A stretch of 63,947 nucleotides of DNA, filler included, from Octopus bimaculoides (lineage: Eukaryota): NCBI RefSeq assembly GCF_001194135.2. It is 7 parts of 6 records of this genome, joined end to end, with 100 filler letters (N's around TTAATTAATTAA, not from the genome) between each part and the next. Parts side by side here need not be neighbours in the genome. Positions count along the whole stretch, not along the records: positions 26,024 to 32,648 come from NC_068985.1; 6 more parts are not named here. One strand, 5' to 3'. The notes under the pieces are model-generated. The model made no database searches, was not told the origin of the DNA, and saw only the letters and a program-made list of their open reading frames with translations. Of this stretch, positions 26,024 through 30,217 are shown piece by piece. A program made the translations under genes and the position numbers. Every line of letters begins with the position of its first letter. The stretch's first letter is position 1.

Positions 26024-28535
26024 AGGGTCCCATGTTACAAAAGGATTTACTTGTTGTTGAAATTCTTGAGGATCAATTATTATATTTGTTGTTTGAAAGT
26101 CACGTAACTTTCGTGACTTATATTCCGACGAAGCACTACTGTCATAGCTAGAACTGCTACGGTTTGAATCATCTCTCAATATGGATGCTGGTCTCGTATA
26201 AGTGCTGCGTAATGGCCTTGGTAACCGATACTGTGATGGTGTCCTTCGTCCAGAGATCGAACTGCTGTGACGTGGACTTGGCAATTGATATTGTGACGGC
26301 GTGCTTCGTCTAGAGCTCGAACTACGACGAAGACGAAATGATGTTTCTGGCTCCAATAAACTGCTACTATCTAAAGTTCGTGACCTGGATGATGACGATG
26401 TTCTTCGCCCAGGGATAGAAATGCGACGAAGACGAAATAATGGTTCGGGCGTTAATGGACTGCTACTAGGTAATCTTGGATCCCTATATGGAGACATTGT
26501 GCTTCGTCCAGGGCTCGAAATGCGACGAAGGCGAAATGGTCTTTTTGGCGCCAATGGAGTCCGACGTAATCTTGATGAACGACGTGGCCTTGGTAACTGA
26601 TATTGTAACGGTACGCTTTGTTCAGAGATCGAGCTACGACGAAGATCAGATGATGTTTCTGGCTCCAAGAAACCGCCTCTATCTAAAGTTCGTGACCTGG
26701 ATGATGACGATGTTCTTCGCCCAGGGNNNNNNNNNNNNNNNNNNNNNNNNNNNNNNNNNNNNNNNNNNNNNNNNNNNNNNNNNNNNNNNNNNNNNNNNNN
26801 NNNNNNNNNNNNNNNNNNNNNNNNNNNNNNNNNNNNNNNNNNNNNNNNNNNNNNNNNNNNNNNNNNNNNNNNNNNNNNNNNNNNNNNNNNNNNNNNNNNN
26901 NNNNNNNNNNNNNNNNNNNNNNNNNNNNNNNNNNNNNNNNNNNNNNNNNNNNNNNNNNNNNNNNNNNNNNNNNNNNNNNNNNNNNNNNNNNNNNNNNNNN
27001 NNNNNNNNNNNNNNNNNNNNNNNNNNNNNNNNNNNNNNNNNNNNNNNNNNNNNNNNNNNNNNNNNNNNNNNNNNNNNNNNNNNNNNNNNNNNNNNNNNNN
27101 NNNNNNNNNNNNNNNNNNNNNNNNNNNTGATGACGATGTTCTTCGCCCATTGCTCGAAATGCGACTAAGATCAAACGATGATGCTGGCTCCACACTGCTG
27201 CTATCTAAAGTTCGTGACCTGGATGATGACGATGTTCTTCGCCCAGGGCTCGAAATGCGTCTACGATCAAACGATGATGCTGGCTCCAATAAACTGCTGC
27301 TATCTAAAGTTCGTGACCTGGATGATGATGATGTTCTTCGCCCAATGCTCGAAATGCGTCTACGATCAAACGATGATGCTGGCTCCAATAAACTGCTACT
27401 ATCTAAAGTTCGTGACCTGGATGATGACGATGTTCTTCGCCCAGGGCTCGAAATGAGACTAAGATCAAGCGATGATGCTGGCTCCAAACTGCTGCTATCT
27501 AATGTTCGTGACCTGGATGATGACGATGTTCTTCGCCCAGGGCTCGAAATGCGACTAAGATCAAACGATGATGCTGGCTCCACACTGCTGCTATCTAAAG
27601 TTCGTGACCTGGATGATGACGATATTGTTCGCCCATGGCTCGAAATGCGACTATCGAACGATGTCTCTGGCGCCAATGAACTGGAGCTGGAATATTTCAT
27701 TGATGGGGATTTATGCCTAGAATCCTCTCTGTAAGGATTTGCCCAAAATTCTTCTAAACTATCTTCAAAATCACGACTCCATCTCGAAGTGTCAGGGTCC
27801 CATGTTACGAAAGGATTTACTTGTTTTTCAAATTCTTGAGGATCAACTATTATATTTGTTGTTTGAAAGTCACGTAACTTTCGTGCCTTATATTCCGCCG
27901 AAGCACTACTGTCATAGCTAGAACTGCTACGGTTTGATTCATCTCTCAATATGGACGCTGGTTTCGTATAGGTAACACGACGTAATTTGGACGTTGGCAC
28001 CGTATAGGTACCACGGTGTTTTGCATCAGTAACTTTTGATTCTTCACGTAATATGGACGCTGGCCTCGTATAAGTGCTGCGAAGTGGTCTTGGTAACCGA
28101 TTATGTGATGGTGTCCTTCGTCCGGAGATCGAACTGCCGCGAAGTGAACTTGGTAACTGATATTGTGACGGTGTGCTTCGTCTAGAGCTCGAACTACGAC
28201 GAAGACGAAATGATGTTTCTGGTCCCAATGAATTACTGCTCTCTAAAGTTCGTGACCTGGATGATGACGATGTGCTTCGCCCAGGGATCGAAATGCGACG
28301 AAGACGAAATAATGGTTCGGGCGTTAATGGACTGCTACTAGGTAATCTTGGATCCCTATATGGAGACATTGTGCTTCGTCTAGGTCTCGTAGTGCGACGA
28401 TGACGAAATGATGTTTTTGGCGCCAATTGACTACTGCTACGTAATCTTGGAGACCGACGTAATCTTGATGAACGACGTGGCCTTGGTAACCGATATTGTA
28501 ACGGTATGCTTTGTTGAGAGATCGAGCTACGACGA
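26024..28535 (-). repeat. Coding long duplication, block C (27794-28535 and 26024-26642), each copy ending in KLRDFQTTNII(V/I)DPQEFxxQVNPFVTWDP
   Basis: Two copies of 742 and 619 bp; the difference is accounted for by in-frame indels of 102 and 21 nt. Confidence 0.9.
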
Positions 28536-30217
28536 GAATGAAATGATGGCATTGATATGTTCGAGCGTGGCAGTGAATGTTGTGACCTATACGGAGACAT
28601 GGAAAAACGTGGTGATGCATATGGTAAGCTATTTGATATATCTCTATTGACAGGTTCCAAGGAATCTCGTAACCGACTATATGGTGTATGTGTAGAAGAG
28701 CGAGGTAAAATGGCAATTGGTATCTCACGTGATCTGGCAGCAAGTTCCAGTGAATCTCGTAACCGACTATATGGTGTATGTGTAGAAGAGCGACGTGAAT
28801 GTGCAATTGGTATCCCACGTGATCTGGCAGCAAGTTCCAGNNNNNNNNNNCTGGCAGCAAGTTCCAGTGAATCTCGTAACCGACTATATGGTGTATGTGT
28901 AGAAGAGCGACGTGAATGTGCAATTGGTATCCCACGTGATCTGGCAGCAAGTTCCAGTGAATCTCGTAACCGACTATACGGTGTATGTGTAGATGAGCGA
29001 GGTAAAAGTGCAATTGGTATCCCACGTGATCTGGCAGCAAGTTCCAATGAATCTCGTAACCGATTATATGGTGTAGGTGTAGTAAAGCGACGTAAACGTG
29101 CAATTGGTATCCCACGTGATCTGGCAGCAAGTTCCAGTGAATCTCGTAACCGACTATATGGTATAGGTGCAGAAGAACGAGGTGATAATGCAATTGGTAT
29201 CCTACGTGATCTGGCACGTTCCAGTGAATCTCGTAACCGACGAAATCGCCCTGATCTTGGACTGGACGACCTCGAAAATGATTCTGCTGAATTATTATTA
29301 TTACGTGAATATGAAAATGTCCGACATCTCAAAAACATTGAAATTTTGCTTTTAGAACTTTTTCTAGATGAGTTGATTGATTTTCTTACCGATATGTTGT
29401 TATATGACATATCCGCCAACGAAGTTCTGTATCGACGTGACGATATACAGAGAGGGTATAATTTTTGTACACTGAGGTTGGGTTCTTGTGTTGGGAAATT
29501 TTGGCATTCCTCGAATGGTTTTCTAGTTGACGAAATTTCATCATTATTTTCCGATTTTTCCTTCCTTGAATATTTAGAAATATAAAACAACGTGTAAGTT
29601 GAATTTGTTATACTATTTTGAATCATTTCCGTGGCTGTATTAATGCCATGTGTGTTTATTCTTGATATCGAATATATTTTTCCTCCTTTTATTTTGCATT
29701 CTTTGTTCGTTGCAAAATTTTCTTCGTCTTCCTTTGGTAAAAACTTATCTAATTCTGCGCTTCTCTTGTTCGATTTAACTGGATGGTTATCAGGGCTGAC
29801 AACCTTTTTTCCATTCAGTGTCTTACATTCCAATTTGTTGTTTACACACACGTTCCTATCGTCTGCTACTTCACATAAACATCTCTTAGTTTTCTCGTTT
29901 TTTGAATAGTCATATTTTGCTGAGCAATTTTCACCATCATCGTTTAACTGGTCATTGTTTTGACTTTCCCTAACATCTATTTCAATCCTTTTCATCATAT
30001 CGTCATTATCATTCGCATTAGAATTTTCACCAACGTTGTCTTGAGAATCAACAAGTCCAATAGTATTTTCTATAATAGCTTCGCATTTATTCAGTCCTGT
30101 AGTTATGCATAATTCCTCATCTAAATCATCTGGGTATTGTGAATGGTCAGCCATTTCTTCAGTTTGGGAGAAGAGGTGTTCATAACTCGAAAAACTATCT
30201 TTCTCTATGGTATTCAT
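26024..30217 (-). CDS. Unrecognised, probably intrinsically disordered Ser/Arg-rich repeat protein (>1300 aa), 3'-incomplete
   Basis: No stop codon in any sequenced base of a ~4.2-kb frame in AT-rich DNA. First ATG is at 30217 (the track's 30226 start is GTG). Differences between repeat copies are multiples of 3 (96/99, 21, 102 nt). The track's stop is the artificial spacer. Frame continuity across the 401-N gap (26727-27127) and the 10-N gap (28841-28850) is unproven. Confidence 0.8.
26650..27690 (-). repeat. Coding tandem repeat B, 96/99 bp (32/33 aa; RRISSPGRRTSSSSRSRTLDSSSLLEPASSFD)
   Basis: TATCTAA recurs at 27202, 27301, 27400, 27496 and 27592; the array continues on both sides of the 401-N gap. 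Confidence 0.95.
28657..29240 (-). repeat. Coding tandem repeat A, 90 bp / 30 aa (PIAHSRRSSTHTPYSRLRDSLELAARSRGI), at least 6 units
   Basis: CAATTGGTAT recurs at 28714, 28804, 28921, 29011, 29101 and 29191 (period 90; the one 117 step spans a 10-N gap with a duplicated overlap). Confidence 0.95.

What the first reader, a model, noticed from the sequence alone, without database searches (positions are those of the whole stretch)
26024..30217. Intronless orphan gene for a giant Ser/Arg-rich protein with hierarchical repeats
Seen: an acidic, Asn/Cys-containing N-terminus (about 250 aa), then at least 6 x 30-aa repeat A, block C, an acidic-aromatic linker, a 32/33-aa repeat B array, and block C again, running off the contig. 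Length differences among copies keep frame. I recognise no folded domain (no RRM, no H1 winged helix). Established: long Arg/Ser-rich basic proteins include molluscan protamine-like sperm proteins and SR-repeat nuclear matrix proteins. Inference: a lineage-specific disordered protein, possibly a sperm or condensate scaffold, perhaps repeating [C-linker-B]n further.
Basis: partly seen in the sequence, partly recalled or inferred. Interest (0 to 1): 0.75.

Follow-up and report, generated by a model that had tools for sequence, protein, structure and literature searches.

The report
Octopus-only disordered Ser/Arg repeat protein gene
This is a real single-exon Octopus bimaculoides gene for a large, probably unstructured, serine/arginine-rich repeat protein; it belongs to a fast-evolving gene cluster found so far only in octopuses, is already in databases under truncated "uncharacterized" models, and has no known function.

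Summary
On the minus strand, one reading frame runs stop-free from the ATG at 30217 to the piece edge at 26024, about 1260 read codons. Each of the three contigs between the gaps has exactly one stop-free frame, and it is the same frame. Both gaps lie inside tandem arrays whose units are multiples of 3 nt. The 10-N gap closes by a 17- or 107-nt overlap without a frame change.

The window is Octopus bimaculoides. The first 454 aa equal RefSeq XP_014774617.1, which is truncated by a gap-spanning pseudo-intron. In the PacBio O. sinensis assembly the orthologue is one uninterrupted 1481-aa ORF with the same architecture. It is labelled "SRRM2-like" from composition only.

The gene is not a singleton orphan. 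It is the second-to-last of eight family ORFs found in an Octopus-only cluster of single-exon paralogues. An exhaustive profile search found 7 relatives, the six identified all from Octopus.

No Pfam or PDB match was found, and AlphaFold gives no confident fold. Most of the protein evolves near dN/dS of 1, yet stop codons are purged (P about 2e-25). Two short motifs, PFVTWDPDTSRWSRDFEDSLEEFW and YSRLRDSLELAARSR, are under purifying selection.

Best reading: a multivalent, phosphorylation-tunable disordered scaffold. A sperm role is untested.

The parts
26024..30217 (-). Open reading frame of the gene: ATG at 30217, 3' end cut off by the piece edge at 26024. The first 454 aa equal RefSeq XP_014774617.1 (LOC106872223, Octopus bimaculoides).
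29243..30217 (-). N-terminal family region, aa 1-325: acidic aa 1-120 (pI 4.06), then a basic Ser/Asn/Lys-rich part. It contains the family-invariant EVADD core of the CEVADD motif and all 11 Cys. It is shared by all 13 family copies examined and predicted disordered.
28658..29242 (-). Repeat A array, aa 326-520: 90-nt / 30-aa units (YSRLRDSLELAARSRGIPIA..RSSTHTP), 6-7 copies as written. It contains the 10-N gap 28841-28850, whose flanks overlap by 17 and 107 nt. The first half of the unit has omega 0.25 and the second half 0.99.
27854..28657 (-). Block C, aa 521-788: a unique stretch followed by diverged 33-aa units (LxPExSFRLRR.SS..R.T...) related to the B unit; pI 12, Ser+Arg 43%.
27683..27853 (-). 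Acidic-aromatic linker, aa 789-845 (IIVDPQEFEKQVNPFVTWDPDTSRWSRDFEDSLEEFWANPYREDSRHKSP...); pI 4.6.
27743..27814 (-). 24-aa conserved core of the linker, PFVTWDPDTSRWSRDFEDSLEEFW (aa 802-825): omega 0.15 among the window and O. sinensis orthologue copies. It is the best-conserved element of the protein.
27128..27682 (-). Repeat B array, aa 846-1030: 96/99-nt (32/33-aa) units LEPASSFD.RRISSPGRRTSSSSRSRTLDSSS, 5.4 copies up to the gap; Ser 39%, Arg 16%.
26727..27127 (.). Assembly gap (401 N) inside the repeat B array. Both flanks sit at the same point of the unit and in the same codon phase.
26081..26725 (-). End of the B array plus the second copy of block C (aa 1165-1379). It is about 88-94% identical in DNA to 27854-28560, differs by in-frame indels of 7 and 34 codons, and has omega 0.69 between the copies.
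26024..26080 (-). Start of the second linker motif (IIIDPQEFQQQVNPFVTWDP), cut off by the piece edge.
30218..31991 (-). 5' flank (presumed promoter and 5' UTR): 91.7% identical over 1790 aligned nt to the flank of the O. sinensis orthologue. The proximal 100-750 nt are also shared at 78-85% with the paralogues, so the duplication unit includes the upstream region.

Best explanation
Shown:
- This is a genuine single-exon protein-coding gene of Octopus bimaculoides (LOC106872223).
- Its O. sinensis orthologue (L005 10001-14446) is the second-to-last of eight family ORFs found in the 93.9 / 87.8-Mb cluster of an Octopus-restricted family of single-exon paralogues.
- All members share a roughly 310-aa N-terminal region with an invariant EVADD core, followed by a member-specific, fast-evolving repetitive tail.
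- The product is about 1.5 kDa-thousand residues long or longer, very basic (pI about 11) and has no detectable fold.
- Its tail is built from 30-aa (A) and 33-aa (B/C) units. A higher-order [C-linker-B] unit is repeated at least twice here and four times in the orthologue.
- Arrays change copy number between species in whole codons. Stop codons and frameshifts are purged, although most residues evolve at dN/dS of about 0.7-1.3.
- Only two short motifs are under clear purifying selection: the acidic/aromatic PFVTWDPDTSRWSRDFEDSLEEFW in each linker, and YSRLRDSLELAARSR in each A unit.

Inferred:
- The protein works as a multivalent disordered scaffold. The conserved short motifs, predicted to be short helices that would fold on binding, act as repeated docking or self-association sites.
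- The Ser/Arg arrays act as charged spacers. Dozens of RRxS/T, RxxS/T and SR sites would let kinases switch their charge.
- Copy number, and therefore valency, is tuned by unequal recombination.

The tissue and the binding partner are unknown.
For: Gene reality:
- A single stop-free frame in each contig, P about 2e-33 overall.
- 100% identity to a RefSeq model over 454 aa.
- The orthologue is one 1481-aa ORF in PacBio O. sinensis, flanked by 1.77 kb of syntenic upstream DNA.
- All 13 family copies have intact ORFs of 388-1481 aa. About 57 stop-creating substitutions are expected on the family tree and none is seen, P about 2e-25.
- Indels are 3 nt inside the CDS but 1, 1 and 8 nt upstream.
- All tandem periods are multiples of 3.

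Reading frame and motifs:
- Linker core omega 0.15 (24 synonymous vs 18 nonsynonymous changes over 129 vs 591 sites). A-unit first half omega 0.25. For comparison, the N-terminus is 0.9-1.3, the B core 0.91 and the C copies 0.69.
- 15 invariant columns in the linker across paralogues.

Disorder:
- No Pfam or PDB match.
- AF2 pLDDT 34 for the N-terminus. For the linker, pLDDT 58 with two short helices.
- GRAVY -1.0, Ser 21.7%, Arg 14.6%.

Charge blocks and kinase motifs:
- Linker net charge -5 and N-terminal 120 aa -21, against +13 to +42 for the S/R blocks.
- 26 RRxS/T, 81 RxxS/T and 88 RS/SR sites.

Family restriction: 7 hits in 1.84e9 representatives, the six identified all from Octopus.
Against: - No transcript, protein or localisation evidence was available. 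No paper mentions any family accession.
- dN/dS near 1 over most of the length is also what a non-functional sequence would show.
- The omega estimates for motifs come from non-independent pairs of repeat copies, which gene conversion can homogenise. Synonymous divergence is also lower in the first half of the A unit.
- The alignments used for AlphaFold are shallow (10 sequences), so a low pLDDT does not prove disorder.
- The scaffold or phospho-switch mechanism is inferred from composition only.
- The 3' end and the stop codon are missing in this assembly.
Confidence: 0.6

Rival explanations
1. One reading: a sperm or spermatid protein, either a protamine-like chromatin condenser or a flagellar/manchette scaffold. 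Its Arg/Ser arrays would bind DNA and be regulated by phosphorylation, as in cephalopod protamine precursors.
For: - Basic Ser/Arg-rich composition with many RRxS and SR sites.
- Single-exon genes in a tandemly amplified cluster with dN/dS near 1. From general knowledge, this is the pattern typical of male reproductive genes.
Against: - No expression data.
- Arg is only 14.6% and Lys is scarce in the tail, far below protamines or PL proteins.
- No H1 winged-helix or any other domain.
- The protein is about 1500 aa with an acidic N-terminus and acidic linkers.
- The gonad transcriptome paper's supplements do not list the family.
Confidence: 0.15
2. An SRRM2-like nuclear-speckle or splicing scaffold, as the RefSeq name of the O. 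sinensis orthologue suggests ('serine/arginine repetitive matrix protein 2-like').
For: - The name is given by NCBI.
- It is a long, disordered Ser/Arg-rich protein.
Against: - No cwf21, PWI or RRM domain.
- No homologue outside Octopus in an exhaustive search, whereas SRRM2 is pan-eukaryotic.
- The name is a composition-driven similarity label.
- The family is a multi-copy tandem cluster with near-neutral evolution, unlike a core splicing factor.
Confidence: 0.08
3. A non-functional or barely functional ORF: an expanded coding-like minisatellite attached to a decaying duplicate. The open frame would be kept by repeat homogenisation rather than by selection on a protein.
For: - dN/dS of 0.9-1.3 in the N-terminus against the orthologue and about 1.0 against paralogues.
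- The CDS is more diverged (8.4%) than the 5' flank (4.8%).
- Antisense frames of the arrays are also open for 194-342 aa.
Against: - The unique, non-repetitive N-terminal region cannot be kept open by homogenisation, yet no stop occurs in 13 copies over a tree of about 944 substitutions, P about 2e-25.
- In-frame-only indels in the CDS.
- Motif cores have omega 0.15-0.25.
- Only one of the six frames spans all the unique and repeated parts.
Confidence: 0.07
4. The hierarchical structure in this window is partly an assembly artefact: collapsed or duplicated repeat contigs, or haplotigs, joined by the scaffolder. The true gene would then be shorter or ordered differently.
For: - Short-read scaffold with two gaps inside arrays.
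- The 107-nt exact overlap across the 10-N gap suggests a redundant join.
- The piece ends inside a repeat.
- A second fragmentary model (A0A0L8H845) exists elsewhere in the assembly.
Against: - The two [C-linker] copies differ by about 12% and by in-frame indels, so they are not the same DNA assembled twice.
- The long-read orthologue has the same order of parts and four linkers in one ORF.
Confidence: 0.1

Closest known systems
XP_036359032.1 'serine/arginine repetitive matrix protein 2-like' (Octopus sinensis) and the full 1481-aa ORF at CM016863.1, about 87.817 Mb
   Same: It is the orthologue.
- 91.4% nucleotide identity over the first 1362 nt.
- Syntenic 5' flank.
- Same order of parts: N-terminal region, repeat A array, C units, DPQEF..WDPDTSRWSRDF linkers, B units.
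   Different: - Copy numbers differ: about 9 A units against 6-7, and 3 B units per array against at least 6.
- It is complete, ending in the family tail ..ADEIHFQSLNRAWHRPNLRRFLN*.
- The RefSeq model (1134 aa) splices pieces out of the continuous ORF.
Octopus paralogues of the same cluster: LOC118763368; CAI9723199.1 (798 aa); CAI9722905.1 (927 aa); A0A0L8H842_OCTBM (388 aa); and the 1388-aa ORF in O. sinensis
   Same: - Shared N-terminal region of about 310 aa (39-63% aa identity) with the invariant EVADD core.
- Shared 5' flank.
- Single-exon ORFs.
- The LRDSLELA motif, and in several members the WDPDTSRWSRDF module.
   Different: - The tails are built from unrelated, member-specific repeats.
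- Several paralogues repeat the whole 110-aa module, including ..SGSCFSDY..EI.SH.LNR.W..FY..MP...QC.F. The window gene keeps only its first half inside the arrays.
SRRM2 / SRm300 and other RS-domain nuclear matrix proteins
   Same: Long, disordered, Ser/Arg-rich, presumably multiply phosphorylated scaffold. This is a functional analogy only.
   Different: No cwf21/PWI/RRM domain, no sequence homology, restricted to one genus, multi-copy, near-neutral evolution.
Nopp140 (NOLC1) and treacle (TCOF1): alternating acidic and basic Ser-rich repeat scaffolds (comparison from general knowledge)
   Same: Repeated alternation of acidic blocks and basic Ser-rich blocks in a fully disordered protein whose charge is set by phosphorylation.
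   Different: No LisH or SRP40 C-terminal domain hit. The acidic blocks here are aromatic and conserved as sequence motifs, not Ser/Asp/Glu runs.
Molluscan and cephalopod sperm nuclear basic proteins (protamine-like PL-I, protamine precursors)
   Same: Basic and Arg/Ser-rich, lineage-variable, fast-evolving.
   Different: - About 10-20 times larger.
- Arg 14.6% instead of more than 50%.
- No H1 globular domain.
- Acidic N-terminus and acidic linkers.
- Expression unknown.

Membership tests
Unnamed Octopus family (LOC106872223 / LOC118763368 / XP_036359032 / CAI9723199 / A0A0L8H842) | Shared N-terminal region of about 310 aa with an invariant EVADD core and other invariant positions | tested here: met
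   Alignments A1-A3; profile search E-values of 1e-68 to 1e-207.
Unnamed Octopus family (LOC106872223 / LOC118763368 / XP_036359032 / CAI9723199 / A0A0L8H842) | Uninterrupted single-exon ORF located in the tandem cluster | tested here: met
   - The window ORF is continuous apart from the gaps.
- The orthologue and 11 other copies are single ORFs.
- 1.77 kb of upstream synteny with the cluster member in O. sinensis.
Unnamed Octopus family (LOC106872223 / LOC118763368 / XP_036359032 / CAI9723199 / A0A0L8H842) | DPxEF..QVxPFxxWDPDTSRWSRDF module; C-terminal tail ..EI.S..LNR.W.. | tested here: inconclusive
   The module is present: one complete copy and one cut copy. The C-terminal tail cannot be seen because the ORF runs off the piece.
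SRRM2 / SRm300 | N-terminal cwf21 domain; conserved orthologues across eukaryotes | tested here: not met
   No Pfam hit at E<=1 in the window protein or its orthologue. No relative outside Octopus.
SR / RS-domain splicing proteins | RRM or PWI domain plus an RS domain of consecutive RS/SR dipeptides | tested here: not met
   No RRM or PWI. 88 RS/SR dipeptides in 1260 aa, mostly as RSR/SRS inside longer units rather than RS runs.
Sperm nuclear basic proteins (protamine-like / H1 family) | H1/H5 winged-helix globular domain, or very high Arg/Lys content in a small protein; sperm-specific expression | tested here: not met
   No linker-histone domain. Arg 14.6%, 1260+ aa. Expression is not testable with these tools.
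Transposable element ORF | RT, endonuclease, transposase, integrase or gag domain; dispersed high copy number | tested here: not met
   No such domain in the ORF. The copies found all lie in two chromosomal clusters; dispersed copy number elsewhere in the genome was not searched. The only TE-like sequence is a separate decayed endonuclease fragment at 31990-32550.

The most novel reading that the evidence does not exclude
The family may be a genus-specific, rapidly amplifying 'arms-race' gene cluster, for example a germline or reproductive conflict system or another diversifying-selection target.
- Near-neutral or positive evolution of most residues, copy-number turnover of internal repeats, and strict conservation of two docking motifs would reflect antagonistic co-evolution with a partner.
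- The window gene would be its largest, highest-valency member. If A0A0L8H845 is its 3' continuation, it is possibly about 2000 aa or more in O. bimaculoides.
- Equivalently novel: a de novo-born condensate scaffold unique to octopuses.
Probability: 0.12. Interest if true: 0.6.

Novelty: new variant of a known kind. Interest (0 to 1): 0.35.

Why it matters
Practical value: the public models of this gene are wrong and can be corrected.
- The O. bimaculoides RefSeq model is cut to 473 aa by a pseudo-intron over an assembly gap.
- The O. sinensis model is spliced out of a continuous ORF and carries a misleading 'SRRM2-like' name.

Biological value:
- It documents an Octopus-restricted tandem family of intronless genes.
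- It shows an instructive evolutionary mode: strong selection to stay open and to keep two short motifs, with essentially free evolution and repeat-number turnover everywhere else.
- That makes it a tidy natural example for how disordered, multivalent proteins arise and grow in a lineage known for gene-family novelties.
- Without expression or functional data it remains a modest finding.

Tried and rejected
- Pfam on all segments, the orthologue and the paralogues gave only sub-threshold noise. CCDC85 at 24.7 bits in one paralogue's repeat is judged spurious.
- The PDB sequence profile search found nothing.
- AlphaFold2 on the N-terminal region (pLDDT 34) and the linker module (pLDDT 58) gave no model worth a fold search.
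- A word-indexed search with a profile of the 110-aa module returned nothing, not even known family members, so it is uninformative.
- The look-up of encoding contigs had no record for XP_014774617.1 or A0A0L8H845. The O. bimaculoides context beyond 26024 could therefore not be fetched.
- Literature: no paper mentions any accession or LOC id of the family, or 'repetitive matrix protein 2-like' in octopus. The O. sinensis gonad transcriptome supplements have no entry.
- Rfam found nothing in the piece.
- A zinc-knuckle reading of C-x-C...C...C in the N-terminus was rejected, because three of the four Cys are not conserved among paralogues.
- NPF (EH-domain) and RVxF (PP1) readings of the motifs were rejected, because the key residues vary among copies (QVNPF / QVSPF / QVGPF / QVCPF).
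- Coding on the antisense strand was rejected. Antisense ORFs cover only single arrays, and the synonymous/nonsynonymous pattern fits the minus-strand frame.

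
Full report
**1. What is in the sequence**

The piece 26024-32648 carries one long open reading frame on the minus strand, from the ATG at 30217 to the piece edge at 26024.
- An in-frame GTG lies at 30226, directly after a stop.
- The ORF is 1398 codons as written, about 1260 of them actually read.
- Of the six frames only this one is stop-free. The others have 27-143 stops.
- With the local base composition, the chance of 1260 stop-free codons is about 2e-33.

**2. 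The gaps, tested first as requested**

The ORF is split into three contigs by Ns. Each contig on its own has exactly one stop-free frame out of six. With the gap lengths as written, it is the same frame in all three.

The 10-N gap (28841-28850) lies in the 90-nt repeat A array.
- The 107 nt on its left are identical to the 107 nt on its right, and the immediate flanks share 17 nt.
- Three joins are possible: as written, by the 17-nt overlap (27 nt removed, restoring a clean 90-nt period with local lag-90 identity 0.95), or by the 107-nt overlap (117 nt removed).
- All three keep the frame.
- One A unit may therefore be a scaffolding duplicate.

The 401-N gap (26727-27127) lies in the repeat B array.
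- Both flanks stop at the same point of the unit (TGATGACGATGTTCTTCGCCCA...).
- Both are read in the same codon phase (..GRRTSSS..).
- Units are 96 or 99 nt, so any whole number of missing units keeps the frame.
- Physical continuity cannot be proven from this assembly.
- It is supported indirectly by the orthologue (section 4).

**3. Anatomy**

| Protein positions | Part | Features |
|---|---|---|
| aa 1-325 | Unique N-terminal region | aa 1-120 acidic, pI 4.06, Asp/Glu/Asn-rich; aa 121-325 basic; all 11 Cys within aa 37-298 |
| aa 326-520 | Repeat A | 30-aa units YSRLRDSLELAARSRGIPIA..RSSTHTP, 6-7 copies |
| aa 521-788 | Block C | Diverged 33-aa units LxPExSFRLRR.SS..R.T.. plus a TYTRPASILRE sub-repeat |
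| aa 789-845 | Acidic-aromatic linker | IIVDPQEFEKQVNPFVTWDPDTSRWSRDFEDSLEEFWANPYRED.. |
| aa 846-1030 | Repeat B | 32/33-aa units LEPASSFD.RRISSPGRRTSSSSRSRTLDSSS; 39% Ser |
| after the gap | End of B, second block C, first 19 aa of a second linker | Second block C is about 88-94% identical in DNA; indels of 7 and 34 codons; cut at 26024 |

- B and C units share one ancestral 33-aa unit.
- All TRF periods inside the ORF are multiples of three.
- Overall: pI 11.0, Ser 21.7%, Arg 14.6%, GRAVY -1.0.

The N-terminal region is about 325 aa rather than 250, and only its first third is acidic.

**4. Identity and relatives**

The first 420 aa are 100% identical to XP_014774617.1, 'uncharacterized protein LOC106872223', Octopus bimaculoides.

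That RefSeq model is a gap-avoiding artefact.
- It follows the ORF for 454 aa, up to window 28856.
- It then places a GC-AG 'intron' at 28855-28587 that swallows the 10-N gap.
- It ends in another frame at the stop at 28527-28529.

The true orthologue was found in O. sinensis.
- XP_036359032.1 is labelled 'serine/arginine repetitive matrix protein 2-like'.
- Its locus contains one uninterrupted ORF of 1481 aa from the same MNTIEKDS start (L005 10001-14446). The assembly is PacBio + Hi-C according to PMC10700109, which cites Li et al. 2020.
- The order of parts is the same: N-terminal region, about 9 A units, C-type units, four DPQEF..WDPDTSRWSRDF linkers, B units.
- It ends in a tail ..SCYTDEPDSMLADEIHFQSLNRAWHRPNLRRFLN*.
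- The first 1362 nt are 91.4% identical to the window.
- 1.77 kb of upstream DNA is syntenic at 91.7%.

**5. It is a family, not a singleton orphan**

O. sinensis (L004 + L005, CM016863.1, 87.76-87.83 Mb) carries eight family ORFs in about 70 kb:
- four members of 432-771 aa with the same N-terminal region;
- a 1388-aa ORF made of about 10 copies of a 115-aa module;
- the orthologue of the window gene;
- a 388-aa member 6 kb further downstream;
- all are single ORFs.

O. vulgaris (ONT assembly, annotated with Iso-Seq and RNA-seq, PMC10700109) has the same cluster at 93.9 Mb of OX597818.1. It also has a second cluster at 51.6 Mb with a 461-aa and a 927-aa member.

The paralogues also share the proximal 100-750 nt of the 5' flank.

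An exhaustive HMMER search of 1.84 billion representative proteins with the family profile found 7 proteins. The six that could be identified are all from Octopus, and the seventh is an unnamed UniParc fragment.

No Pfam family and no PDB sequence matches.

A second O. bimaculoides fragment, A0A0L8H845 (745 aa), may be the missing 3' part of this gene.
- It has two more linkers and more B units, and it is not encoded in this piece.
- Its accession is adjacent to that of the 388-aa paralogue A0A0L8H842.
- The O. sinensis gene order is also compatible with that reading.
- This is an inference, not shown.

**6. Selection**

Most of the protein evolves at or near neutrality.

| Comparison | dN/dS |
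|---|---|
| N-terminus vs orthologue | 1.31 (dS 0.053, dN 0.069; 10 synonymous, 52 nonsynonymous; not significantly above 1) |
| N-terminus vs paralogues | 0.6-1.0 |
| The two block-C copies | 0.69 |
| B core | 0.91 |
| Second half of the A unit | 0.99 |

The CDS is more diverged (8.4%) than the 5' flank (4.8%).

Yet the frame is strongly protected.
- Over the non-repetitive N-terminal 900 nt of 13 copies, the NJ tree length is 1.05 substitutions per site.
- About 6% of random substitutions would create a stop. About 57 are therefore expected and none is seen, P about 2e-25.
- Indels are 3 nt in the CDS, against 1, 1 and 8 nt upstream.

Two short elements are clearly constrained.
- The 24-aa linker core PFVTWDPDTSRWSRDFEDSLEEFW has omega 0.15 among the window and orthologue copies and 0.34 against the distant paralogues. 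It shows 15 invariant columns.
- The first half of the A unit, YSRLRDSLELAARSR, has omega 0.25. It is also recognisable in most paralogues as LRDSLELA.LR.
- These values come from non-independent repeat pairs and should be read qualitatively.
- They also fix the coding strand and frame.

**7. Structure**

- AlphaFold2 with the family alignment gives mean pLDDT 34 for the N-terminal 330 aa.
- For the linker module it gives pLDDT 58, with two short helices (PQEFEKQ and SRDFEDSLEEFW) and no globular fold.
- The alignments are shallow, so this is consistent with disorder but does not prove it.

**8. How it most likely works**

Shown: this is a translated-frame-constrained, domain-less, block-charged protein with repeated conserved short motifs and fast repeat turnover.
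- The acidic N-terminus carries net charge -21 and the acidic linkers -5.
- The basic S/R arrays carry +13 to +42.

Inferred: a multivalent disordered scaffold.
- The conserved motifs are docking or self-association 'stickers' that fold on binding.
- The Ser/Arg arrays are spacers whose charge can be switched by basophilic and SR kinases, given 26 RRxS/T, 81 RxxS/T and 88 RS/SR sites.
- Valency changes by unequal recombination in whole-codon units.

I put about 0.95 on 'real gene of an Octopus-restricted family' and about 0.35-0.4 on the scaffold mechanism. The stated 0.6 is for the combined account.

Rivals:
- Sperm chromatin or flagellar protein: 0.15. It fits the evolutionary pattern, but there are no expression data and the composition is far from protamines.
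- True SRRM2-like speckle protein: 0.08. Its defining domain is absent.
- Neutral non-functional ORF: 0.07. This is contradicted by stop-codon purging in unique sequence.
- Partly an assembly artefact: 0.1. The copies differ, and the long-read orthologue shows the same plan.

**9. Comparison with the known, and novelty**

- The gene and its relatives already exist in databases as predicted, uncharacterised or mis-named models.
- No paper found mentions them.
- The gene is not a member of SRRM2, SR proteins, SNBPs or any TE family. The defining features were tested and not met.
- In kind it is a lineage-restricted, low-complexity, tandem-repeat protein gene, which is a known category. Its motif and architecture are new.
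- Interest is modest at 0.35. It gives useful corrections to annotation and a neat evolutionary pattern, but no function.

Noticed in passing
window 31090-31183: (GT)47 microsatellite about 0.9 kb upstream of the ATG. A shorter GT run lies at the orthologous place in O. sinensis (L005 9046-9124), and GT runs recur between cluster members.
   Followed up: partly
window 31990-32550 (+): Decayed fragment of a non-LTR retrotransposon apurinic-type endonuclease (..GDFN.., ..TDH..).
- It has one in-frame stop at 32203-32205.
- The Pfam Exo_endo_phos hit is weak: E 9.4e-4, 19.4 bits, below the cut-off.
- Similarity to the O. sinensis orthologous flank ends exactly at 31991. This suggests a lineage-specific insertion or deletion.
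   Followed up: partly
window 28527-28856 (-): RefSeq XP_014774617.1 leaves the ORF at 28856, skips 28855-28587 as a GC-AG intron that contains the 10-N gap, and ends out of frame (VTTFTATLEHINAIISFSS*). The O. sinensis model XP_036359032.1 likewise removes aa 124-265 and the last roughly 210 aa of a continuous ORF. Both look like annotation artefacts.
   Followed up: yes
window 27150-27734 (+) and 28557-29585 (+): Antisense ORFs of 194 and 342 aa run through the B and A arrays (for example LEMRLRSNDDAGS.LLLSKVRDLDDDDVLRPG repeats). Similar antisense ORFs exist in the O. sinensis orthologue. They are probably a by-product of stop-free repeat units and were not examined for conservation.
   Followed up: no
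L004 40861-45027 (O. sinensis) and L002 21490 onward (O. vulgaris): The neighbouring paralogue (1388 / 1378 aa) has lost most of the N-terminal family region. It consists of about 10 tandem copies of a 115-aa module (..DPDTSRRTRDSDDYLAAFGED..SSGSCFSDYIGEME.LSA.EIRSH.L.RLWDRAFY....RV.RIRPEMPNV.QCVFEQQ). This is a different way of amplifying the same family module.
   Followed up: partly
L004 6200-6574 and L003 14747-15121: Isolated block-C/linker-like coding similarity (41% over 156 aa, plus the linker motif) lies between two cluster members, outside any long ORF listed. It may be a decayed family member or an unannotated exon.
   Followed up: no
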